64,000 bases of DNA, taken from NCBI GenBank assembly GCA_047495785.1, contig JBLDXI010000061.1:87575-151574 (forward strand), in the 5' to 3' direction. A program made the translations under genes and the position numbers. Source of the DNA: Lepidodermella squamata. Lineage: Eukaryota > Animalia > Gastrotricha. Shown here piece after piece: positions 4,549-64,000 of the stretch (positions within the stretch are counted from its first letter, which is position 1; each line of letters starts with the position of its first letter). Below the pieces are notes generated by a model. That model worked only from the letters and a program-made list of their open reading frames with translations. It was not told where the DNA came from and did no database searches.

Positions 4549-5706
4549 TACAAAAGGCGTGCCTACCCACTAACAAACAAAAATGACAATAAAAATTGAA
4601 AAATCTATAAACTTGTGTGAAAAAAAATATATATAAAAAAAATTCTGAAAAATACTCAAAAAAAATGAAAAAATGAAAGAAAATTATAATGAAACTATGC
4701 TGTGTGATTGTATACGTTCTAATTCATTGTACGAACCAACTCTTATATATATTTTTTGTGCATATATGTGCCTATGTAATCAGTGTGTGCATAATATTAC
4801 TAAAAGATATTAGATATGATTGAATAGTAATAAAGCAGAAAAAAAAAATTTACGCAACAACTCTCTAACTAAATATACGGAACGAAATATAACCAATTCT
4901 CATTCACGTTTATTGCTAATTAAAAATTTTGTAAATGCTTGGCGCCTTCGGGCTGGCATATTATATCGAAATAATGAGAAAATAAAATAATCATGTTGTT
5001 GTTGTTGTTGTTATTATTATTATTGTTGATGTTGAGTTTTCAAATTTCTTTATTTTTTTCTACAAAGTATGCTCCTTTTCATAGTTTACAACAAACCTAA
5101 TGCCGTCGTGACTGCAAAAAGTTTTCCTTAGGAGGATTGTTAATTTCTGGAATAACCTGAATTTTAACACTATTAATGCTAGCTTGAACATGTTTAAAAA
5201 CACCATAATGTCAAGTGATTGTTCGAAATTTCTTACCTCATCAGTGAGGCGCCAGCTCTAATATTTCTTTGTTTTCTTATCATTTTGCTATAATTGCCTC
5301 GGCGATGGTTGCAAGTAACATTAAAATAAAAATAAAATAAATAAAATTCTGACATCGGAATCGTGATCTACGTGGTCGATTTACCCTATCCAGCCAGGAC
5401 AAAATCATGAGACGCAGTATAACTGAATGAACACAGCTTTACTGTTGGCTACGCTTTTAGGCCCTGTAATATTTTCCAGAGTAATTCGCTTTTGTCGGAT
5501 CGGAGCGCAGGTGCCCGCATAACAGGAAAAATAGCCAGCTTTTGAGGTGGTAGTAGTGACGTCACTGCTTCCTCATTTCGTCAGTTCGTTACTCTGTTAT
5601 TCCCGAAAAAGCTAACACACTTCAAAAAATAAGAGAGACAGTTGCAGCCGAACTCAAAAACTATTGGTTCAGTTTTGAGACCCACGATGCGATGCCGCTA
5701 TACAAT

Positions 5707-5853
5707 CAGGGTGCGAAGTACAGGGGTGCCTAACCGGGACTTTAATCAGAGGAAGGCTGAATAAAACCACAGGGGGACCCTTTGGTTTCGTCGGCTGGGT
5801 CGTAGAAAACAAGTAAAAAATACCTTAGCTCCCGGATCCTACTTCGCACACTG
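5707..5853. mobile_element. hAT-type MITE, family A
   Basis: TIR cagggtgcgaagta...tacttcgcacactg, perfect 8-bp TSD tatacaat. Related copies at ~11787, ~32416, ~36560 and ~45619. Confidence 0.9.
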
Positions 5854-7745
5854 TATACAATGGGTGGTTTCGATCAAATGTTCGTAGCTACCGAATCTTC
5901 CTTACTAAAGATGACATACAGGTAGGTTCAGGATCAGTTTCATCAAATTACTCACTTCTTTTGCTCAGGGGCCTTCTTATCGGAAGCATCAGCAGCTTTC
6001 ACCTGTTCCATTAACGCCAACATAGCCTCATCGTTTTGCCAGATCGAGCTCGGCGTGTCGACTTTAGGGTTGAACTGATTTCGAAACTTTTCTTTGAGCT
6101 TGGCCTTTCAGTTGCTCAATATCGATCTTGGGTGCTTCGACGGCATCGCCGACAGCAGCCTCTTGGTTAACAACTACTGGATCAACTTCCTCCATTTAAA
6201 AATGAATTATGACTCTAAGGGACTACTTTGCGCCTTGACTTGTTATTTTCAGAAACATCTGTTAAGCGTAATCACTCAAAAACACCATCTGGCTCACATT
6301 ACATAGCTGTTTTCATTTAAATGCCATTAAAAGTTAACTCTAAATATCTAATGTCAACATCAAACGTGTTAAGTCGACATTACATAGGCTGGGTCTATGT
6401 AAAGTTAACATTACATAAAAATCGACATTATATACGACATATACGAATTAATCACGGCTGCGTGATTAAACAACGTGTTAAATTAAATTGAATTGTATAC
6501 TGGTTGAACTTTGAATGATGGACTGCCTAAGGAATTGCGCCTGTAAAAAAAACGAATGAAACATAATTTGAAAAAGCAGGATCTTGAACCGTGGAGGTAG
6601 GTAAGGATTAATCTTTGTCAGCCTTCACCCTTTTCAAAACCGGAAACGGTAAATGACGGCAGTCTAGGAGGGGTTAATTAAAAACTATTGTTATTTTAAT
6701 TTATCTGCCTAGACACCATGGATATGCTTTTTCTCATCCAGATTTTAAGTAGAGAATGTGTTTTTCTTCAGGAAATAACCAAACATATAGGAACAGGAAT
6801 CCTGAACTTGTGCTTCGTGCGAAAACTCGATTTCAGCGCTTGAATCTCGTTTCAGCCCTTATCATCGTTAGGGATTCCATTTCGCATTGTTTTCTGAACA
6901 CTAGTGTATCCATCTGTCCATTTATCTGACCATTTGTCCCAAAGTAACATAGACATCTTTCAAGTCCTTGCCTCCATAACAACAAAAGGATTTACATTTT
7001 TCGTAAATACACCATGGTTTACATACGGTTTTACTTTTGCTGGTAATAACGTGTATTCATGATGTTTAAAGCTACCAACACACACCGGCTTGTCAAAATG
7101 GTTACACACTACACACAACGTGCTCGGATAGCATTATAACAAAAGCCATTAGCTTGCAGCTTTCACTATCAATTTTCGATCACGTAGCTACGAACTACGA
7201 GCACACCAAACGAGACAATTGTTTTGCGACGACTGTGTTGCCTTGCGACTCCAGATAGACTAAACCTCTCACATCAACTTCAACCTTCAATCAATTTTGC
7301 AGTTGTCTTGACCTGAAGAGGCCTGTTCCTCGCCTTGCAAGGGCTCTAGCGTTGGAGGATCGATCAAAAGCAGCGGCCGGGATTGACTGTGGCATACGTA
7401 AGTCTAGGAATAAAATGTTGATTAAATTCAGACCTAATCCCGCGTTTATATCATGGTAATGTACCTATAAGGGCCACGAAATCAGGACTCTAAGGGACGA
7501 GTTCAAATTCCATTGTGGTTCTGGCTATTGATTATTTGAAATGTCCTCGAAGATTACCAGGGTATATTTCATCTCGCGGAAAATTGATTTTCAATTGTGA
7601 AAATTCTGCTTTATTTTTTGTAATTGGATGGGATTAGCTACTTAGGTCGCAATACATCTTTAGTTAAAATCCCATGTGTCATTCTGACCATTAACCATTC
7701 TGAGAGAAAATTCAATTTTTATCCGCGATTTAACCGAAGAAATAC

Positions 7746-7799
<54 letters not shown>
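7746..7799. repeat. (AAT)n microsatellite
   Basis: Perfect AAT run. Confidence 0.95.
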
Positions 7800-8189
7800 G
7801 TTTTATTTTTCCTCTTCGAAACTGAGCGTCGTTCTTTAATCTTTACCCTTATTTTTTATCATTGGTTTTCTTTTTCCAGCGAATTTCCTTAGTAAGACCT
7901 ACTTTAATTTGGTTTCTATGCACTCCGTTGATCCATCTGGCTCGAGGTCTACCCCTGGGTGCGAACCACCCAATCAGAGGCCTCCAAATATATATTTTGT
8001 GTATTAGTCCTTCTACATCGATTTTCGAATTCTAAGACATTTTTAGATCTTGTTTTTACTTTTTCTAACTTTGAAACTATAAAAAATGTACCGAAGAAAA
8101 CCCGGAAAACCCAGACTCATTCTAATATCTCAACCAAATATCCCCAGACTCATTCGATCCCTTTAACAAGTGACATACTTCATTGTGTG

Positions 8190-8509
8190 ACCACTTAAAA
8201 GTCCAATCTAATGCGCACGTTGATTGGTCAATCGATCGTTGCTATGACTCCCGGATGAAACGTTCTGTCGTGCGATCCATAAGATTTTTTGCAACAAGTG
8301 TTTTTTTCCGCAGCAATTTACCACAATTTATATGGAGTTTACGCTCGTTGTCAATGGAAACCGGGCAGAGGGTGTGGCAAGGTCATTTTTGTCATAAATA
8401 TAAAATAATTTATTAGTGGATCGCACGACGGAAATGTTTCATTTCGGAGTCATTAGCAACGATAAATTGACCAATCAGCGCGCGCGCCAAGGTTCAACTT
8501 ACCAGTGGT
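8190..8509. mobile_element. MITE-like element
   Basis: Imperfect ~60-bp inverted arms (accact...gattggtcaat.gatcgttgctatgactcc / ggagtcattagcaacgat.aattgaccaatc...agtggt). Confidence 0.6.
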
Positions 8510-9186
8510 TCCACAATGTTGATTATTCTTCTCGTGACTTTTGTATTTTTTCTGATTTTTTCTTGCCATCAGATTTAAGAGTTCTGAATTCTCATCTCTA
8601 TACTTATGGGACGCGCTGTAGCTTCATTTCATGTCCTCCGTTCAATCAGCTAGCTAGTAATTTATAACTGTTGATAGCTAAGTGAATGAGGGCGACTTTA
8701 TAGATAATTTCGGCGACAGGCGAGCAGACCTGTTACTTGCAAACTGTTAATCGCACAAGAGTCCTCTGTCGAATGGATGTAACCCCGTAGAAAAAGTCCT
8801 CGAATTTACGAAATTGCAGGCCAAAAACTTTAATCATAATTTATTTGACACTCATGCATGTTTTAAATAAAAGATGCGCGCATACACACACAAAAGTTCT
8901 TGTCTCAAGAAAAAAACGTGCGCATGCAGATCATTACGTTATTATTTTATTTTTTATAAGCTTCGCCCGAGGTAGGTAGATTTTTCGGTAAGCTGTAATA
9001 ATAATGAAGATATTGACAGCGCCAACTATCGTGGAAGCTTCCAATTAAATTTGCCACACAAGTACTAGAACTGGCAGAGAGAAAGCGATGCATCCATCTA
9101 CATTAGCTGAAGCTAACTACTTGGTGTACAGTGGGTGTTTTCATTATCACTGACGTCTTTGTTTTCGAGAATATCATTTCCACAAA

Positions 9187-23674: not shown

Positions 23675-25038
23675 ATGAGATACGAGAAAATTCCAAAAAC
23701 CATGTTTGTTTTCATAGTTTTGTTCTCTATAGCTTTCCTAGGGCCAATTTTAGCTGAGCAAAAGCGTTATGATGGCGATCAAGTGTATCGAATCATACCC
23801 GCGACACCCCAGCAGCTCGATTTGCTTCAACAGGTCTATTCAAGCGAGGGCGAGGAGCAGCTGGATTTTTGGACGGATCCTGTTCTTGTGAATAAGCCAG
23901 TTCACATTCGAGTCCCGGCTCAATTTCGCGAGTCAGCCACGAGATTTTTCAACGAAACGAAGTTGAACTTCAGAGTTGTTGTACCCGACGTTCAGAAGCT
24001 TATCGAGAATGTTGATCAGCTGAATGCTGAAAGACGGAAGACGCTCAACTATGAATCAGATCCATCTTCTATCGTCAACACTTATGCTTCGTATGCGGAT
24101 ATTTCGAATTGGATGAGCTCTGTTTGTTCTAAGAACCCAAATTTGGCAGAATGTGGCAATATTGGAGAATCCTTTGAGAAACGGCAACTGAACTACATTA
24201 AACTCGGTTCTTCAAAACCTGATAAATCTAAGCCCAAAATATGGATCGAAGGAAATATTCACGCAAGGTTTGAGTTAGAAATTATTCTTAAACATACTTC
24301 ATTGCCTAATCTTCTAGAGAATGGCTCTCTTCAGCAACCTGTGTTCATTTGATCAATCACATGGTAACAAGTTACAACACCGATCCAGCCGCTAAGCGGA
24401 TGCTGGATAATTACGACTGGTACATCTTCCCCGTCCTAAATCCTGATGGTTATGAGTTCAGCAGGGCTAAGGAACGTCTGTGGCGTAAAACCCGGTCGAA
24501 AACCGATATTGAATACTGCGATGGCGCTGATCCCAACCGAAATTGGGACTACAAATGGGGAACAGTTGGCAGCCAATCGTTTGCTTGCTCTGAAACATTT
24601 AGAGGGGTGAAGCCGTTTTCTGAGCCTGAAACTAAGGCTCTATCGGATTTTGTTATGGCAAATCGAGAGAACTCTAAGGCCTACTTCTCTCTTCATACTT
24701 TCTCGCAGTATTGGATGACCCCATATGGAGTGAAGCCTAACCCTGACGACTACAACGAGCTTATGCGAGTCGCGAATATCGGAGCGAGTGCATTAATGGC
24801 TGTGAATAAGACGAAGTGGAAGGTTGGCAGTATCGTCGAGTTGTTGTATGAAGCATCTGGTGGCTCGAATGATTGGGCGAAAGCTGTTGCGGGGATTAAA
24901 TACAGCTATTGCCTTGAACTCAGGCCCGCAAATGGCCAATTCGCAAACGGCTTCGTGGTTCCTGAGAGCGAGATCGAACCTAGTGGTCGTGAAGTTTGGG
25001 CCGGCCTTGTCGCAGCTATAGACGCAATTCCGGATTAA
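23675..25038 (+). CDS. M14A zinc carboxypeptidase (A/B-like) with propeptide
   Basis: Propeptide LDFW; HAR|EW across 50-bp intron 24268-24317; NPDGY, RLWRKTR, GADPNRNW, SLHTFSQ, GGSNDW, ELRP. Confidence 0.95.
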
Positions 25039-56618: not shown

Positions 56619-57538
56619 TTAAAATAAGTCACCGATGTAAAAACTAGGGGTGGTATCCGATTTAGAATCGCCGGTAGCTGGGGGACGCTTGGGTCCAGTA
56701 GCAGCCGCATCGGATTTACCCTTGCCCGAGTTGTGGCCGGCAGTCGATGTCTTCATGGGTTCGGTTGCAGTATTCTTTTTGCCATCCTTCGCCTTGGTGG
56801 TCGTTTTCTTATCTGATCCTCCGGTAGTGGGAGGACGAGTAGGTCCAGTATTTGACGCATCGGCTTTACCTGAATTGCCCGAATTCTTGCCATCAGTTCC
56901 ACCATTTTTGGCGGTATCTTTGTTGCCATCTTTCGAGTTGGGTTTTGGCTTATCAGATTCAGAATTGCCAGAAGCTGGAGGACGTTTAGGTCCAGTAGGA
57001 GCCGCATCGGATTTACCCTGGCCCGAATTCTTGCCGTCAGCTTCACCATTTTTAGCGGTATCTTTGTTGCCATCTTTCGAGTTGGGTTTTGGCTTATCAG
57101 ATTCAGAATTGCCAGAAGCTGGAGGACGTTTAGGTCCAGTAGGAGCCGCATCGGATTTACCCTTGCCCGAATTCTGGCCGTCAGTCGATGGCTTCATGGG
57201 TTCGGTTGCAGTATTCTTATTCGAATTGGTGGTTTTTGGCTTATCTGATTCGGAATTGCCGGTAGCTGGGGGATGCTTAGGTCCAGTACCAGCCGCATCG
57301 CCTTTAGCCGAATTAGCTGCATTCTGGCCGTCAGCCGAGTGCTTCACGTATTTGGTTGTATTAGGGGTATCAGTTGCAGTGGGTTGCTTTGGCTCATCCT
57401 TGTTGACATTCGAACCAATAGGCTTAGCAGAGACCACGATAATCAAGCATGCCAAGGAAAAAAGCGAAGCTATATTTTAAAAGAAATCACATTTTCTGCT
57501 TTTTTGCTAACTTCTGACTTACCAGATAGGATATTCAT
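56619..57538 (-). CDS. Secreted intrinsically disordered G/K/D/T/P-rich repeat protein
   Basis: Micro-exon MNILS + 2nd exon; signal peptide; ~40-aa repeats GKSDAAPTGPKRPPASGNSESDKPKP. Confidence 0.8.
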
Positions 57539-57885
57539 GTTTTTTATTATCTGATAAATTGTTGCTTTGACAAATATTATAAAACGGCGGTCAGATAAGT
57601 ACTCCTGGTCACGGCTGGCGGCAAAGAACAATGGATATAGCGTCTTTATGCATTGACAATGAAGCTAGGGTTAAGGGTTATGATAAGTTCGGTTTTTTAT
57701 TTGTGTTTTTTCGGGCATGGACCTTGACAAAAAGTTCACCAATGGATGAAGGAGCAATGTAATGTAAATGGCAAAAGTAAACATGAACCAAAATATCGGT
57801 TTTCATGCTTGAAAAAGTGTGCTTCTTCTAACAAGATTCTGCAATATCATGAAAGAAAAATGGAAAAAAGGAATTTATTCACGTA

Positions 57886-58389
57886 CAGTGACAATCAAAA
57901 GATCCGCGCGGTGGGATTGAGGCGACGATAGCTGAAATTTTTCGCACGTGTGAAATGAGGCTGTTTATCTCCTTCAAAACGGACCAAAATGACGCCTTTT
58001 TCACGACTTCCGAAAATAGCTCCAAGGGGGATAGTTTCAACAATAGAATTATGTCATGAAACTAGGACATTCTTAGTTTAGCGCCAAAAATTGCGGAAAA
58101 ATGTGAATTCTTAGAATAAGGTTAAAACAAATCAAAAATAATTTTTCCGGAATTTTGCTGACATAATTATCAACTTGGAGGGCTTCGGAATATTAATTAG
58201 CACCTTATGAATATTCATAATTCATATTTTTAAAACTATTGAAAAATTCTTGGTCTGTCCGAGTTACATTTTTTATTTATAGCTGAGTTTAACCCAAGCT
58301 TGGAGCTAAAATTAGTTCGAGCGCGAGTGAGATATTTTTAGTTTCAGCTCAACAAATTCCTGAACGTGCGTAACTTTTAGTTTTCACTG
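57886..58389. mobile_element. Tc1/mariner-type MITE
   Basis: TA|cagtgacaatcaaaagatccgcgcg ... cgtgcgtaacttttagttttcactg|TA. Confidence 0.8.
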
Positions 58390-58878
58390 TATAATTTGAT
58401 TTCAAATTATTGTATAAAACCGTGATTATTGAACCGGTATTATCGACAGCCTTTTTCATTTTTTCTTCTTCTTTTCATTTTGATATAGATTTTGATTAAT
58501 TTGATTCCCTACAAATTGTTTCATATAATATATTCATATTAGGCAGCTCTCACTTGCTACATACATACTATACCAGAAGAGTCAAAAGTAGCTGCCAAAA
58601 AATTAAAGGATACGCCTCGTTCATAGGAAGTTCGAAATTACCCTCGGTAAACAGTCTGTATTCCGCAACTGATTCTACAATGAATGCTTACAAACAAATA
58701 AAGCTGGCTCATCCTACGTCATGAACTAACTAATCTATTGGTCACGGTTGATAAGCCTACCTGGATTATCAACGAGCAAATACGTTATTAATTGTTCTTC
58801 GCAGCCAGCCGTGACCGAAGAGAACTCATCTAACCGCCGTATTATCGCAATCGTCAAAAATTGGGTCATCACATAATC

Positions 58879-59744
58879 ATGAATATCAAGTCATGTAAGT
58901 CAGGATGTTAAATCAATTCAGAACTTATTGCCGTTTTTTTCATATAGTTTCGATAGTTTTTCTGGCGTTTTTGGTTCTCGTGGTCTCTGCTAAACCAACT
59001 ACTTCGACGGATAATAAGGATGAGTCGACGCAATCGGCCGCCACTGCTACAACTAATGACGAAATCACCTCGCAAATCAATGACAACAAGGCCAAGTTAA
59101 ATGCTGCCAAGGCTGGAATTGCCGATCTAGAGAAGGAGAGTAGAGCTGAACAAGCGAAAATTGAGGAGGATCGCAAGAAGACTGTCGAACAGCTGAGCAA
59201 GCAGATCGAAACCAACCGTAACAAAACTTCGGCTTCTTCGAAAAGTTTCCAGGAGGAGTTGAAGAAGATTGAAGAAGCTCGAGCTCAGGTTCAGAACGAA
59301 ACGAACCGAATGTGTGAGGCTGCTCGCGAGAAAGTTAAGGAGGCTAACAAAAGGGCTCAGGAAGCTCGGACTAAGTTAAATGATGCTCGAAAGGAGCAGG
59401 AATCTGGGGTCCGCAATGCAACTCTGGCTGATCAAGCCAAAATCGCCGAGGCCAACAAGAAAGCTAACGAGGAGCGAAAGGCCACGGCCGAAGAATACCA
59501 GCAGAAACTCGAAGCAGCGCGAAAGGAAGTGGACACTTTGAACAAGCAAAACGCTGAATACCAGCAGAAACTCAAGGACACGAAGGCAGAAAGCCAGAAG
59601 AAGCCGAAAGAGACTGGTAAATCTGAATCGGATAAGGATAAGACCATCTCGAAGGATAGCAAAAAGGAAACTACAGTGCGCACAAAAAGTCAGGTCCCAC
59701 CCCGCTCACCCGGAAATTCGCGGGTAAAATTTGAAAATAATTAG
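58879..59744 (+). CDS. Secreted coiled-coil protein, inverted paralog of 56619-57538
   Basis: Micro-exon MNIKS, intron 58895-58947, signal ...VVSAKP, long E/K/A/Q coiled coil, tail GKSESDKDK. Confidence 0.8.
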
Positions 59745-60009: not shown

Positions 60010-60442
60010 ATGGATGAATCTCCCCTTTGCCTTTTGTGGGCGATCTGCTCAACCCAACCGACCTTGCAACCTACCACAGTTACAGCCACAGCCACATCCC
60101 TACACAGCGCTGGAACGTCGGAAGAACCTGAACCAGAGGCCCAAAGCCATCCGTCAGCCAGTACCCCGGTGCAATTATTTGACCACAAGGAGTATGATAT
60201 TTGTTTTCGTCAACAATAATAGAGTCATATCTTCTTTTGTACATAGAGCAATAATCGGCCTTGCGGCTGTGGCGGCGGTGATGTTTTTAGTCATAATCAT
60301 CCTGTTCACATTACTAATTAAGAAGACGCTGAAAAGGCGAGTCCGTCCTGTAGCTGTCGAGGAGGGCAGAGGAGGTGCAATTGAGTTTGTTGCTAACAAC
60401 GAGCAAGTGACTTTTGATCGTGCGGGGGTGAAACTAGACTAA
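60010..60442 (+). CDS. Small single-pass membrane protein with S/T/P-rich ectodomain
   Basis: Two exons joined by a short GT-AG intron; TM AIIGLAAVAAVMFLVIIILFTLLI followed by KKTLKRR. Confidence 0.55.
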
Positions 60443-60590: not shown

Positions 60591-61544
60591 ATGATCCGTC
60601 TTATTGCAATCTGGCTGCCGATGTTAGTTCAGGGCGTTATCCCTGCCGATAAAACGAGTTCTCTTGAAGTTGACCAATTGCGAATCATTTCTGGAAGAAA
60701 ATTCAAAGAAATGCTCCTAACGAGAAAGCAAAAATGTTTCAAAGAATGGATTTCTAATGCTGACGCGAAATGCAAAAGTGATGAGACTCCTGATTATCGC
60801 CGCTTAGCATTCGAGCTTGTTGTTTGCGAAGCTGAGCGAGAAGGAAGGAAGACGCAAAATTGCAGCGCAGCCGAGAACTGGAAGACTTGCTATGCAAGTT
60901 ATGATGAGAAAGATCTGGACGTCTACGCAGCGTATTATCCTGAAATTCCGGGCTATTGCGCCGGTGTTAAATTTGATGCCAAATCGATTGCGATAGACAC
61001 GGTCAATGACTTTTTCGCCGGCTTTTTGGAAGTCAGGACAAAGTTTAACGAATTCATTCTGGAATATCCTCTTTGGAGAGTAGCTATCTCCCAAATTCTA
61101 ATGCTACCTCATCAGCAAGAATCGTTCAAAAAAGGCCAATTGATTTTTTACCTCATTATAATTGCGCTATGGATGATGTGCAAATCATTTCTCAAGCTTG
61201 GCTGCGAGGAATTGCTGCTACAAATATTATTTTGTGCCATCGGGGAGTTCATAATTGCCGCGACATATTACACGACTGTCGGTTTGGCTCTCGTAAGTAC
61301 CCAAGACAGACTTTCTCAATAAACCTGACTTCGATATTTTTAGAGCTTGATGCTGGAAGAATCCACCATCTGCATTATCATTAGATGGATTTTCGTCTTT
61401 ACGAAATCTGATGTCTGGTATATCATAATTGGCCTCGGAAAGAGGATGTATGAGCGTGCTAAGAGCTGGCTGCCTACTCAGCTCGTGGAAGAAGTAAGCA
61501 GAGACGGCACTGGACGCTTCACTGTCCCAAGAAGACGCAGATAA
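60591..61544 (+). CDS. Brambleberry/GEX1/Kar5-like nuclear-membrane fusion protein (shortened)
   Basis: Signal peptide; Cys-rich domain C-x11-C-x17-C-x11-C-x8-C-x22-C with LAFELVVCEAEREGRKTQNC, matching the Brambleberry CRD as I recall it; C-terminal TMs; intron 61293-61343. Confidence 0.8.
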
Positions 61545-61770
61545 GGTTTCATCTGCATGATCACTGCACTGACTAAAATATATTCGTTGCATTACAATCT
61601 TGCCTATAATTTCGTGCCTCAATAGTAAAAGTCTGGTGCTACAAGTCATTTTATTTTAATTTTAATATTGCATGCATGTTGACTAGGAAGACAGTAAAAC
61701 AATATTTGACTAGTAACTCAACATACAAATACAAAAATTCAAATAAATTATCGTCAACGAAAATAAACTG

Positions 61771-62898
61771 TCAAATGTGTTCGATGAAGTTTCCGTTTTC
61801 TTGACACACAAGTTTGATTCGTCTTTTCATTTCCACTGTGCAAATTTTTTCAATATAGTCCAGTGACATGGCTTTACACTCCTCTTCAATGAGCCATTTG
61901 AGATGAGGAAGAGTAGATGGCCGACGGCGATAAACCCGCGTACGAAGAACGCCCCAATAACTATTATCCAGTGGCGTTAAATCGGGCGAGTAAGGAGGAA
62001 AATTCATAGGCCCTTTGTTTCCTATCCAGCGCTCCGGAAAATGCAAGTTAAGCAGATACTTTGTTTGAGTGGCGGTGTGAATGGGCGCGCCGTCGAGTTG
62101 GAACCAAACATCAGATCGCAACTCGCTGTCGGTCATTGGAAATTGCCTATTAATTTCAGGAAAATAGCGCTCTTTAAGAAGCTGACAATATTTTTCCGCG
62201 TTGATCCTATCCTTGGGTCGGTTTGGCTCAAGCCGTGGCAAGTCATCAAAGAAGAATGGACCCAGAATGCCATATCTCCACAAACCAATGGATACCATGA
62301 CGCCACTGTGCTCACGGCGCTTTGAGTAATATTTCCTTCGATCAGCCGGGTCGCCCCAATAGCGCAAGTAACTAGTACGCACTGTTCCATTAAGCGTGAA
62401 CAGTGCTTCATCGGTCCACACTATCATATCCAGGAAGTTCGGATCTATCTCCAGCATTCTTCGAGCTGCACTACAAAAGTTTGCTCGGCGATAAATGTCT
62501 TGTTGATTCAGCTGATGGACTCTGCATGCAGTTTTGCATCGCCATTTCAAGTTGAAACGTATGATATTGCGCACGCTTTGTTTGGAAATCATAAGATGGT
62601 CCGCAATATCCTCGACACGCGGCCTCGTAACTGAAATATTAACTTCGGGGTCAGCAATGTCTTCACATAACGCAATCGCAGTGTGATAAATATTTTCGTC
62701 CGTTCTAGCAGAGCGCGGTCTACCTGATCGCGGCAAGTTATGGATCGATCCTGACTGATTAAATTTCTTGACAAGACGTAGGCGGTATTTTCTGTTCGGG
62801 GGGTTACTTTCAAACCGATTTCGCCAAGCTTCACAAAACTGTCGGTAGGGAACTTTGGTATTATTGAAAGCAAATATTCTCTCCTCAGTTGTGAACAT
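61771..62898 (-). CDS. Intact Tc1/mariner-superfamily transposase, DD41D (rosa/VS-type)
   Basis: N-terminal HTH (KKFNQSGSI..LPRSGRPRSART), WTDEA, FQLDGAPIH, PPYSPDLTPLD; 41 residues between the 2nd and 3rd Asp. Confidence 0.93.
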   Translation of the reverse strand: MFTTEERIFAFNNTKVPYRQFCEAWRNRFESNPPNRKYRLRLVKKFNQSGSIHNLPRSGRPRSARTDENIYHTAIALCEDIADPEVNISVTRPRVEDIADHLMISKQSVRNIIRFNLKWRCKTACRVHQLNQQDIYRRANFCSAARRMLEIDPNFLDMIVWTDEALFTLNGTVRTSYLRYWGDPADRRKYYSKRREHSGVMVSIGLWRYGILGPFFFDDLPRLEPNRPKDRINAEKYCQLLKERYFPEINRQFPMTDSELRSDVWFQLDGAPIHTATQTKYLLNLHFPERWIGNKGPMNFPPYSPDLTPLDNSYWGVLRTRVYRRRPSTLPHLKWLIEEECKAMSLDYIEKICTVEMKRRIKLVCQENGNFIEHI

Positions 62899-63080
62899 AA
62901 TAATATCTATAAAACAAAAGACTGAAAATTAGTAAAAATTTCATTTTCGTAGTTACACAATTACAGATTAGGGACATGAAAAATGGAGATGAAGAGAACA
63001 AAGTTAAATGCCTAATTGAAAGTCTCGCAATAGATTAGACTAGTTCGGAGTTGTGAGTAGAGAAATTACGGCATAAGTTC

Positions 63081-63728
63081 TCAATCCGAATCAAGTGAGC
63101 TAATGCTGTCAGCCTCAGATTTCTCATCACCGACTTCGGGCATAAAGTTGCAGTCCCTCATCTCATTGTTATCGATAGCATATGCGAACTGTGTTGCATT
63201 GCGAAGGCGCAGAACGAGGTTCCATTGATTGCATTGGGGACTCATGACGTAATTTCTCAGCTTTTGCAACTCCGAATTCGTGTAATCTATTGAAAGGCGA
63301 TCAAATTCGGCAAGCGAGATAGGTTTATCCGTAGAAGGAGGAAATTTCATCAGCAGAGCGCAATAATGCTTTGACTGAGTAAAAATATGAAGAAAAAACG
63401 GATGAAAATCAATGGCAAGAAACAAAAATCCAAGAAGAAAAGAAAATCCACTAAAAAAAAGCAACAAAGCCAGGATTAAAACAAGTCGAATGATGCAAAA
63501 GATGAGACTGAAAAATTTACCATACAGGGCGAAAGACGTGATCTTGAGGACGCAGAACATTAAAATGATCAAGGACGATGTCAGAGAAAACGAGAAGAAG
63601 TCGGAGAAGAAGTAAAAAATATATGGTGTCGAAAAGATTGAGGAAGGCGCGGGTTTCCGGCAAATATCGTAGACTTTGCAGTTAATTTCGTCCTGAAGAT
63701 CAGAACTGGCAGAGCTGGGCGAAGACAT
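63081..63728 (-). CDS. Truncated NEMP (TMEM194)-like inner nuclear membrane protein
   Basis: ~3 TM helices, then FPP...SLAEFDRLSIDYTNSELQKLRNYVMSPQCNQWNLVLRLRNATQFA plus an acidic tail, matching the conserved NEMP C-terminal region as I recall it; no luminal N-terminal domain; intronless. Confidence 0.72.
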   Translation of the reverse strand: MSSPSSASSDLQDEINCKVYDICRKPAPSSIFSTPYIFYFFSDFFSFSLTSSLIILMFCVLKITSFALYGKFFSLIFCIIRLVLILALLLFFSGFSFLLGFLFLAIDFHPFFLHIFTQSKHYCALLMKFPPSTDKPISLAEFDRLSIDYTNSELQKLRNYVMSPQCNQWNLVLRLRNATQFAYAIDNNEMRDCNFMPEVGDEKSEADSISSLDSD

Positions 63729-64000
63729 GGTGAATCTAGAAAAAGAACACGGAACCTTATGGATTTCTTTACGAAAAACTAATCTCATATCTCGATTCTT
63801 TAAAGCACGCAAATAAAAAGGACATGTTACCGTTTCAACTTTTGAATTGGGCTCAAATTTAATTTATCAATTTGGCTGGGATGTTGCAGGCGTTATTCAA
63901 TTCTTTAAGAACCTAAATTTTGAAAACGGTAACACAAGGGTTTTATGAACCAAAAATACTCGCGGAGTTTCAACCTTTAAGGCATGCTAAAAAAACTATG

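What the first reader, a model, noticed from the sequence alone, without database searches (positions are those of the whole stretch)
60591..63728. Transposase sandwiched between two shortened nuclear-envelope genes (Brambleberry-like + NEMP-like): candidate cargo-carrying selfish element
Seen: an intact DD41D transposase lies 226 bp from a convergent Brambleberry/GEX1/Kar5-type gene and 182 bp from a co-oriented NEMP-type gene, and neither gap contains an inverted-repeat pair or TA-flanked terminus. Both neighbours are shortened: the Bmb-like gene lacks most of the coiled coil and the NEMP-like gene lacks the luminal domain. Known: Bmb/GEX1/Kar5 mediate nuclear-membrane fusion (karyogamy, karyomere fusion), and NEMP is an inner-nuclear-membrane protein linked to fertility. 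Inference: the three genes travel together in one large Tc1/mariner element whose cargo alters nuclear-envelope access, pronuclear fusion or germline transmission. I know of no described system like this.
Basis: partly seen in the sequence, partly recalled or inferred. Interest (0 to 1): 0.92.

Follow-up and report, generated by a model that had tools for sequence, protein, structure and literature searches.

The report
Mariner-type transposon carrying nuclear-envelope genes
The three genes, plus a fourth small membrane-protein gene, appear to sit inside one roughly 5-kb Tc1/mariner-type jumping gene whose relatives have kept a shortened nuclear-fusion (Brambleberry-like) gene beside the transposase through very deep divergence, which has not been described for this normally single-gene transposon type.

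Summary
There is an intact DD41D transposase (61771-62898, -). It lies 226 bp from a convergent 300-aa Brambleberry/GEX1/Kar5-type gene and 182 bp from a co-oriented 215-aa NEMP-type gene. Neither gap holds a terminal repeat.

All three homology calls survive testing.

The structural inference is largely supported by relatives from metagenome contigs:
- Every member of the closest transposase clade (44-62% identity) with enough flank carries a short Bmb-like gene. This holds in the convergent and the tandem gene order.
- None of these has inverted repeats next to the transposase, whereas 13 of 15 ordinary relatives (~30% identity) do.
- In two relatives a conserved 26-nt terminal inverted repeat (TA-CAGTG..CAAAAG..GTCC) encloses the whole multi-gene block (4.9 and 5.3 kb).
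- The same motif occurs once in the window at 59672-59697, facing the block. It also bounds a 508-bp MITE-like element at 57884-58391.

The window copy therefore starts at 59672 and includes a fourth gene (60010-60442). Its other end lies beyond base 64000 and was not seen.

Whether the NEMP-like gene lies inside the element is less certain. What the cargo does is untested, and the host is an unidentified animal.

I rate it a new variant of a known kind, interest about 0.8.

The parts
59672..59697 (+). Outer terminus of the large element: TA followed by a 24-nt terminal inverted repeat, TACAGTGCGCACAAAAAGTCAGGTCC, pointing rightwards into the gene block.
   Evidence: It is the only match in the window to the pattern derived from relatives. 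No match occurred in 100 shuffles, even allowing one mismatch. It scores 16 of 17 against the consensus, the best site on either strand. It aligns with eight other termini, and similarity starts sharply at TACAGT.
60010..60442 (+). Cargo gene Y': a small single-pass membrane protein of 125 aa with a Ser/Thr-rich N-terminal part, one membrane span and a basic tail. Exons 60010-60191 and 60247-60442, with a 55-nt intron.
   Evidence: Splice model read from the sequence. Membrane span at residues 63-81. A homologue lies at the same position upstream of the Bmb-like gene in L012 (117-413): tblastn E 7.6e-4, 39% identity over 98 codons. Proteins of similar architecture lie inside the repeat-bounded elements L002 and L004.
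60591..61544 (+). Short Brambleberry/GEX1/Kar5-type gene of 300 aa: signal peptide, six-cysteine luminal domain, about 60-residue linker, three membrane spans and a short tail. Exons 60591-61292 and 61344-61544.
   Evidence: A profile of the family hits 398 proteins, including UniProt 'Protein brambleberry' of Nematostella at E 6.9e-12. The pairwise comparison gives E 5e-9. The cysteine spacing 12-18-12-9-23 is identical to that of canonical Bmb proteins. All six cysteines are conserved across 30 sequences. The cysteine-rich domain is modelled at pLDDT 93-97.
61771..62898 (-). Intact Tc1/mariner-superfamily transposase of 375 aa with catalytic triad D163/D269/D311 (DD41D) and an N-terminal helix-turn-helix region.
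   Evidence: Pfam DDE_3 and HTH hits, all below the curated cut-offs. The family profile matches Mos1 at 4e-9 and SB100X at 7e-6. The triad is invariant. The protein belongs to a 100/100-supported clade of cargo-linked transposases.
63081..63728 (-). NEMP-type gene lacking the N-terminal half (215 aa): about three membrane spans plus the conserved C-terminal region. It is probably cargo, but the terminus on this side was not seen.
   Evidence: Pfam NEMP at E 1.7e-8, 34.8 bits against a cut-off of 28.7, covering profile positions 133-239 of 249. A homologue sits in the same position and orientation in L003. A NEMP-type gene sits likewise on the P0001 contig.
57884..58391 (.). 508-bp MITE-like non-autonomous element bounded by the same family of terminal repeats.
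   Evidence: The arms 57884-57910 and 58365-58391 are 27 nt long and 78% complementary. They are the second and third best matches to the terminal-repeat consensus in the whole window, at 15/17 and 14/17, and they face each other. They align with the other termini.

Best explanation
The block is one copy of a family of composite cut-and-paste transposons of the Tc1/mariner superfamily, with a DD41D, Visitor-like transposase. They are about 5 kb long.

Their 26-nt terminal inverted repeats (TA | CAGTG-N5-CAAAAG-N4-GTCC) do not hug the transposase gene. They enclose a set of cargo genes for membrane proteins:
- always a shortened Brambleberry/GEX1/Kar5-type protein;
- a small mucin-like single-pass protein;
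- in the window's sub-clade, a half-length NEMP-type protein.

The window copy begins at 59672 and runs rightwards through Y', the Bmb-like gene, the transposase and the NEMP-like gene. Its second terminus lies beyond base 64000.

Shown: the gene content, the homologies, the recurrent linkage, the terminal repeats, and a MITE-like derivative in the same window.

Inferred:
- The transposase binds these repeats and moves the whole unit into TA sites.
- The cargo proteins insert into the ER and nuclear envelope. The Bmb domain would face the perinuclear lumen and the NEMP C-terminus the nucleoplasm.
- They serve the element's own propagation in germline or early embryonic nuclei. Both the cargo genes and the repeats have been kept intact while synonymous sites saturated, which fits that role.
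For: **Recurrent linkage.** A Bmb-like gene lies next to the transposase in every related locus with enough flank.
- Convergent: window, the P0001 contig, L012, L001.
- Tandem: L002, L004, L005, L007, L009.
- Head to head with a very distant transposase: L011.
- Sources.
- None of 80 loci holding ordinary relatives has a Bmb-like gene.

**Terminal repeats.**
- 13 of 15 ordinary relatives have repeats of about 20-290 bp close to the ORF. None of the 11 family loci does.
- Instead, L004 (54-78 and 4905-4929) and L002 (140-164 and 5387-5411) have inward-facing repeats around the whole block.
- L009 and L007/L008 have the left repeat.
- The left repeat lies 306-344 bp upstream of the transposase ATG in four distinct loci.
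- The motif occurs nowhere else in the 92 loci.
- In the window its three best matches are 59672 and the two MITE arms.
- Similarity among the nine termini starts exactly at TACAGT, and the flanks are unrelated.

**Phylogeny.**
- The cargo-linked transposases form one clade with 100/100 support.
- Terminal pairs in the Bmb tree match the transposase tree.

**Long-term selection.**
- All sampled transposases keep the catalytic triad.
- Synonymous sites are saturated while dN is 0.2-0.6.

**Possible insertion polymorphism.** Five contigs from two assemblers start exactly k bases before the first element base. This points to an assembly-graph branch at the TA|CAGT junction.
Against: - The second terminus of the window copy was not seen, so this copy may be truncated or immobile.
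- No terminus on the NEMP side was seen in any clade-A locus.
- No two near-identical copies, no empty site and no unambiguous target-site duplication were observed. Every sampled copy is at most 69% identical in protein to any other. That pattern also fits old, vertically inherited loci.
- In the Bmb tree L001 groups with clade A, whereas its transposase groups with clade B. This may be a long-branch effect.
- In L002 the contig runs 1 kb past the right repeat without a break. A simple filled/empty-site polymorphism does not predict this.
- The host species and the copy number per genome are unknown.
Confidence: 0.75

Rival explanations
1. A domesticated, immobile transposase sits in a conserved host gene cluster. 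The genes are ordinary host genes kept together by microsynteny, and the relatives are orthologues or old paralogues in related species.
For: - All copies are deeply diverged and intact, and none are near-identical.
- Introns are present, including one conserved at the codon of the third catalytic Asp in five clade-B loci.
- No repeats lie next to the ORF.
Against: - Conserved TA-CAGTG inverted repeats sit at the outer borders of the block in L002 and L004, and at one border in L009, L007/L008 and the window.
- Flanks outside the repeats are unrelated.
- A MITE-like derivative with the same repeats lies in the same window.
- Several diverged copies co-occur in single samples.
- The catalytic triad is fully kept.
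Confidence: 0.12
2. The composite element is real for the transposase, the Bmb-like gene and the small membrane protein. The NEMP-like gene is a neighbouring host gene outside the element, and clade-A copies share it because they are orthologous, vertically inherited insertions.
For: - The NEMP-like gene is found only in clade A (window, L003, P0001 contig).
- No terminus was seen on that side.
- Clade-B elements place their left repeat 306-344 bp upstream of the transposase, roughly where the NEMP-like gene sits in clade A.
Against: - The gap between the NEMP-like gene and the transposase holds no terminus (best score 8 of 17).
- The NEMP-like gene keeps its position and orientation at about 60% transposase identity with saturated synonymous sites, and it is itself 35-42% identical.
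- It is truncated like the Bmb-like cargo, not a full-length host NEMP.
Confidence: 0.25
3. Chance adjacency: an ordinary transposon copy that lost its repeats happens to lie between two unrelated host genes.
For: There are no repeats in the two gaps.
Against: The same neighbours recur at ten or more independent loci down to 44% transposase identity. No ordinary relative has such neighbours.
Confidence: 0.02

Closest known systems
Visitor / rosa-type DD41D family of Tc1/mariner transposons
   Same: DDD catalytic triad with 41-residue spacing, an N-terminal helix-turn-helix region, TA-flanked terminal inverted repeats, and superfamily-level similarity to Mos1 and Sleeping Beauty. The family name is taken from bioRxiv 10.1101/2022.10.13.512200.
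   Different: - Ordinary relatives fetched here have their repeats within a few hundred bases of the single ORF. Here the repeats are about 5 kb apart and enclose three or four further genes.
- The repeats start with CAGTG, as in Tc1, rather than the CAGGGTG seen in the ordinary relatives.
- Placement relative to reference Visitor sequences was not tested.
Mariner elements carrying Fanzor1, endonuclease or methyltransferase genes (Bao and Jurka 2013, PMC3627910)
   Same: These are Tc1/mariner-type elements with TA duplications that encode two or three proteins besides, or including, the transposase. They show that passenger genes are possible in this superfamily.
   Different: - Those passengers are nucleic-acid enzymes, in protists and giant viruses, and often in single-copy chimeric elements.
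- Here the cargo consists of membrane proteins derived from nuclear-envelope families, in an animal-type genome.
- Here the cargo has been kept through a deep radiation of the element.
Brambleberry / GEX1 / Kar5 nuclear-fusion proteins
   Same: Signal peptide, a luminal cysteine-rich domain with six cysteines at identical spacing, and C-terminal membrane spans. The family definition is from PMC4291462.
   Different: - About half the length, with only about 60 residues where the coiled coil lies, and a short tail.
- The short forms separate from canonical long forms with 100/100 support.
- The gene is encoded inside a transposon.
NEMP (nuclear envelope integral membrane protein) family
   Same: The Pfam NEMP domain scores above the curated cut-off in both the window and L003.
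   Different: Only the C-terminal part of the model is matched (positions 133-239 of 249). The signal peptide, luminal part and first membrane spans are absent from the ORF.

Membership tests
Tc1/mariner superfamily, DD41D (Visitor-like) | DDD catalytic triad with 41 residues between the second and third Asp | tested here: met
   D163, D269 and D311. The first two are invariant in 11 sequences. The third is present wherever the ORF or spliced exon covers it, and it aligns with the catalytic E of SB100X.
Tc1/mariner superfamily, DD41D (Visitor-like) | Sequence similarity to characterised Tc1/mariner transposases | tested here: met
   The family profile matches Mos1 at E 4e-9 and SB100X at 7e-6. 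Pfam DDE_3 and the HTH families are hit only below their cut-offs.
Tc1/mariner superfamily, DD41D (Visitor-like) | Terminal inverted repeats at both ends of the element | tested here: inconclusive
   Met for the relatives L002 and L004, which have both ends. For the window copy only one end (59672-59697) lies inside the window.
Tc1/mariner superfamily, DD41D (Visitor-like) | TA target-site duplication | tested here: inconclusive
   Every one of the nine termini is preceded by TA. Without an empty site, the TA cannot be told apart from a conserved terminal base pair.
Tc1/mariner superfamily, DD41D (Visitor-like) | Simple structure: one transposase gene between closely spaced repeats | tested here: not met
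   The repeats are 4.9-5.3 kb apart and enclose three or four further genes. Ordinary relatives meet this feature.
Tc1/mariner superfamily, DD41D (Visitor-like) | Groups with reference Visitor/rosa sequences in a tree | not tested
   No reference Visitor sequences were available. The nearest named proteins are arthropod transposase-like proteins at about 30% identity.
Brambleberry / GEX1 / Kar5 | N-terminal signal peptide | tested here: met
   Residues 1-19 are hydrophobic by a hydropathy scan. This is a heuristic, not a dedicated predictor.
Brambleberry / GEX1 / Kar5 | Cysteine-rich domain with six conserved cysteines near the N-terminus | tested here: met
   C49, C61, C79, C91, C100 and C123. 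The spacing is identical to Nematostella Bmb and other long forms, and the cysteines are conserved across 30 sequences. Profile E 6.9e-12 to UniProt 'Protein brambleberry'; pairwise E 5e-9.
Brambleberry / GEX1 / Kar5 | [quoted passage not shown] | tested here: inconclusive
   Only about 60 residues separate C123 from the first span, against about 115 in Nematostella Bmb. The model shows helices there at pLDDT 63-78. No coiled-coil predictor was run.
Brambleberry / GEX1 / Kar5 | [quoted passage not shown] | tested here: met
   Three hydrophobic spans at 183-201, 208-226 and 229-247.
Brambleberry / GEX1 / Kar5 | Match to Pfam Tht1 (PF04163) | tested here: not met
   No hit. The canonical animal and protist relatives tested also miss this model, so the miss says little.
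Brambleberry / GEX1 / Kar5 | Nuclear-envelope localisation and a role in nuclear membrane fusion | not testable with these tools
   Needs localisation and genetics.
NEMP | Pfam NEMP domain above the curated cut-off | tested here: met
   34.8 bits against 28.7 for the window, and 29.2 against 28.7 for L003.
NEMP | Full-length architecture: signal peptide, luminal N-terminal part and all membrane spans | tested here: not met
   Only profile positions 133-239 of 249 are matched. No coding potential exists in the 272 bp upstream. Exons beyond the window cannot be excluded.
Domesticated transposase | Loss of terminal repeats and fixation at one orthologous locus | tested here: not met
   Repeats are conserved at the element borders in several diverged copies, and the flanks are unrelated. 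Orthology of the loci could not be tested.

The most novel reading that the evidence does not exclude
The transposon uses its own truncated nuclear-envelope proteins to act on germline or zygotic nuclei. The proteins are a Bmb-like luminal cysteine-rich protein, a half-NEMP and a small mucin-like membrane protein. They might, for example, interfere with or exploit pronuclear or karyomere fusion, or inner-membrane mechanics, so as to gain chromatin access or bias the element's own transmission. That would make it a cut-and-paste element with a dedicated cell-biological 'transmission module', possibly acting like a drive.
Probability: 0.2. Interest if true: 0.92.

Novelty: new variant of a known kind. 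Interest (0 to 1): 0.8.

Why it matters
Tc1/mariner elements are the textbook minimal transposon: one gene between two short repeats. Their mobility is known to fall as size increases (my own knowledge, not tested here).

A lineage that has carried a fixed set of membrane-protein genes through a deep radiation suggests that the cargo serves the element. Two of those genes derive from proteins of nuclear fusion and of the inner nuclear membrane.

If so, it gives a tractable handle on how a DNA transposon deals with the nuclear envelope in the germline. It also gives natural minimal versions of the Bmb/GEX1/Kar5 and NEMP proteins, whose mechanisms are still unclear.

In addition, it shows that looking for repeats only next to a transposase can wrongly label such elements as domesticated or dead.

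Tried and rejected
**Searches that found nothing**
- An exact look-up of the window transposase found nothing.
- Word-indexed protein searches with the Bmb-like exon and the NEMP-like ORF found nothing. The exhaustive profile search was needed.
- Rfam found nothing in the window.
- Pfam Tht1 was not hit by the window protein or by canonical relatives.
- The PDB sequence search and a fold search with a good model of the cysteine-rich domain found no solved relative for the Bmb-like protein. The PDB sequence search found none for the NEMP-like protein either.
- Scans of bacterial/archaeal genomes and of viral contigs found no relatives. One scan could not run because the alignment was too diverse.
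- Paper searches for the sample accessions found nothing, so the source organisms stay unknown. Cluster look-ups of the nearest Bmb-like hits gave no names.

**Analyses of limited use**
- The JGI metagenome scan returned only ordinary relatives at 36% identity or less. These were useful as controls.
- dN/dS could not be estimated, because synonymous sites are saturated in nearly all pairs.
- No repeats enclosing the block were found in L001, L005 or L011. Their contigs are cut, or interrupted by MULE or Gypsy elements.

**Idea set aside**
- I considered that the element truncated the ORF at 58905-59744. The similarity to its paralogue is low-complexity and does not decide it.
Full report
**What is in the window**

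- The Bmb-like gene is on the + strand. Exon 1 is 60591-61292, the intron is 51 nt (gtaagt..tttttag), and exon 2 is 61344-61544. The product is 300 aa.
- The transposase ORF is 61771-62898 on the - strand, 375 aa, uninterrupted.
- The NEMP-like ORF is 63081-63728 on the - strand, 215 aa.
- The gaps are 226 and 182 bp. Neither contains an inverted-repeat pair that flanks the transposase.

The rest of the window carries animal-type genes with few and short introns: a class C GPCR, an M14 carboxypeptidase with its propeptide, a sulfotransferase and ankyrin proteins. The host is therefore an animal, but I could not name it.

**Homology calls**

*Transposase*
- It matches Pfam DDE_3 and HTH models only weakly.
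- The family profile hits Mos1 (E 4e-9) and Sleeping Beauty SB100X (E 7e-6).
- The catalytic residues are D163, D269 and D311, a DD41D spacing. D311 aligns with the catalytic E of SB100X.

*Bmb-like protein*
- It has no Pfam hit.
- A profile built from it and its relatives found 398 proteins in an exhaustive search. One is the UniProt entry 'Protein brambleberry' of Nematostella, at E 6.9e-12. The direct pairwise comparison gives E 5e-9.
- Its six cysteines (49, 61, 79, 91, 100, 123) have exactly the spacing of canonical long forms, 12-18-12-9-23. They are conserved across 30 short and long sequences.
- With a signal peptide and three C-terminal membrane spans, it fits the published family architecture (PMC4291462), except for the coiled-coil region. 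Only about 60 residues occupy that position.
- It also lacks most of the C-terminal tail of the animal proteins.
- AlphaFold models the cysteine-rich domain as an all-helical domain at pLDDT 93-97. It has no solved structural relative.

*NEMP-like protein*
- It passes the Pfam gathering score, but covers only positions 133-239 of the 249-position model.

**Relatives**

The nearest transposases, at 44-62% identity, all come from unannotated ENA metagenome contigs. Fetching their contigs gave the key result.

| Arrangement | Loci |
|---|---|
| NEMP-type gene, transposase, convergent 234-aa gene in the Bmb position (no DNA held) | P0001 contig (62%) |
| NEMP-like gene, then transposase | L003 |
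| Small membrane protein, Bmb-like gene, convergent transposase | L012 |
| Transposase with convergent Bmb-like gene | L001 |
| Bmb-like gene about 1 kb downstream on the same strand | L002, L004, L005, L007, L009 |
| Bmb-like gene head to head with a distant transposase (28% identity), plus a small Ser/Thr-rich membrane protein | L011 |

- None of the 80 loci with ordinary relatives (36% identity or less) from JGI metagenomes has a Bmb-like gene.
- In a tree, the cargo-linked transposases form one clade with 100/100 support. It splits into clade A (the window's, with the NEMP-like gene) and clade B.
- The short Bmb-like proteins separate from the canonical long ones with 100/100 support. Their terminal pairs mirror the transposase tree: window with L012, L004 with L009, L005 with L007. 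L001 is placed differently in the two trees.

**Terminal repeats**

As a control I searched for inverted repeats within 500 bp of the ORF.
- 13 of 15 ordinary relatives have clear repeats of about 20-290 bp, mostly starting TA-CAGGGTG.
- None of the 11 family loci has any.

Searching further out found 25-27-nt inward-facing repeats around the whole block in two loci:
- L004, at 54-78 and 4905-4929;
- L002, at 140-164 and 5387-5411.

Both share the pattern TACAGT[GC]-N5-CA[AG]AAG-N4-GTC.
- L009 has the left copy. L007/L008 has a slightly diverged one.
- In these four distinct loci the left repeat lies 306-344 bp upstream of the transposase ATG.
- Slightly widened to admit the window's variant, the pattern occurs nowhere else in the 92 loci.
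- In the window it occurs once, at 59672-59696, with no match in 100 shuffles even allowing one mismatch.
- Aligned, the termini are similar from TACAGT inwards, and unrelated outside.

The elements are thus 4.9 kb (L004) and 5.3 kb (L002). They hold the transposase, the Bmb-like gene and two small membrane-protein genes.

**The window copy**

The terminus at 59672 faces rightwards.
- About 310 bp inside it starts a fourth gene, Y' (60010-60191 and 60247-60442, 125 aa, single-pass). L012 has a homologue of Y' in the same place.
- Then follow the Bmb-like gene, the transposase and the NEMP-like gene.
- The partner terminus is not in the remaining 272 bp. From the geometry of the relatives, I expect it a few hundred bases beyond base 64000.

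The window also holds a 508-bp MITE-like element at 57884-58391.
- Its arms are the second and third best matches to the terminal consensus in the whole window, and they face each other.
- This indicates that the family's repeats have been mobilised in this genome.

**Age and selection**
- All pairs of copies are saturated at synonymous sites, while dN is 0.2-0.6 for the transposase, the Bmb-like gene and the NEMP-like gene.
- The transposases are intact and keep the triad. L012 may lack its first ~14 codons.
- Five clade-B loci share a phase-1 intron inside the codon of the third catalytic Asp. Splicing restores that Asp.
- Keeping both the 26-nt termini and the cargo ORFs over such divergence argues for selection on mobility and on the cargo, not for a decaying insertion.

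**An unexplained regularity**

Five contigs begin exactly k bases before the first element base:
- 55 bases in three contigs named 'scaffold' (L004, L007, L009);
- 141 bases in two contigs named k141 (L002, L008).

L007 and L008 are the same locus from two samples. A flank length that scales with k means the assembly graph branches right after the TA. An insertion polymorphism would produce that.

The right ends do not fit a simple filled/empty model. L004 ends one base after the TA, and L002 runs on for 1 kb. I therefore treat this only as a hint.

**Verdict**

The best reading (confidence 0.75) is a family of composite Tc1/mariner-type transposons with conserved membrane-protein cargo. The window holds one copy, cut by the window's end.
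- A domesticated transposase in a conserved host cluster remains possible (0.12). It explains neither the conserved outer repeats, nor the unrelated flanks, nor the MITE.
- Membership of the NEMP-like gene is less sure, since no terminus on its side was seen (rival at 0.25).
- The function of the cargo is not addressed by any result here. I favour a role at the nuclear envelope of germline or early embryonic cells that helps the element's propagation. This is inference from the parent families only.

**Comparison with what is known**
- Multi-gene Mariner elements exist: passengers such as Fanzor1, endonucleases and methyltransferases, in protists and giant viruses (PMC3627910).
- The four papers in the searched library that hold both 'brambleberry' and 'transposase' have titles and abstracts on unrelated topics; I did not read them.
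- I therefore rate this a new variant of a known kind.

Noticed in passing
window 58905-59744 (+), with paralogue about 56619-57491 (-): A secreted, low-complexity, Lys/Glu-rich protein gene runs 73 bases into the element's terminal repeat, so its last codons and its stop lie inside the element. A diverged paralogue lies head to head with it. Their upstream regions share a 31-nt inverted repeat (57607-57637 and 58786-58816). The MITE-like element sits between the two genes. Whether the insertion truncated the gene could not be decided.
   Followed up: partly
L002:1-141, L008:1-141, L004:1-55, L007:1-55, L009:1-55: All five contigs start exactly k bases (141 for the contigs named k141, 55 for those named 'scaffold') before the first element base after the TA. 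This implies an assembly-graph branch at the element border, which hints at insertion polymorphism. The right ends do not fit a simple filled/empty model.
   Followed up: partly
L011:39-3930: A very distant transposase (28% identity, about DD43D spacing, placed among the outgroups in the tree) lies head to head with a short Bmb-like gene and next to a small Ser/Thr-rich single-pass membrane ORF (1040-1360). A similar cargo set thus recurs with a far relative. No terminal repeats were found. A Ty3/Gypsy element follows at 5082-9113.
   Followed up: partly
L005:2786-4090 and L001:3274-4245: MULE-type transposase genes lie right after the Bmb-like exons in L005, which probably interrupts that gene, and right beyond the small membrane-protein ORF in L001. 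L005 and L006 begin at the same base in two different assemblies.
   Followed up: no
L004:1370-1415, and equivalent sites in L002, L005, L007, L009: A short (46-nt in L004) phase-1 intron splits the codon of the third catalytic Asp (G|AT) of the transposase in five clade-B loci. Clade A, L001 and P0010 lack it.
   Followed up: partly
L010:183-2213: The sister lineage of the cargo-linked clade (P0011, 36% identity) has no Bmb-like gene. An Arf-like small GTPase gene lies 280 bp downstream on the same strand. No terminal repeats were found.
   Followed up: no
window 23675-25038 (+): An M14 carboxypeptidase with its activation peptide is split into two ORFs that overlap by four bases (23675-24352 and 24349-25038). 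This is either a very short intron or a frameshift.
   Followed up: no
proteins P0099, P0110, P0111, P0115, P0235 (ENA contigs): Further short (277-348 aa) Bmb-like proteins from metagenome contigs group with the transposon-borne ones and not with canonical long forms. Their neighbourhoods could not be fetched, so it is unknown whether they are transposon cargo too.
   Followed up: no
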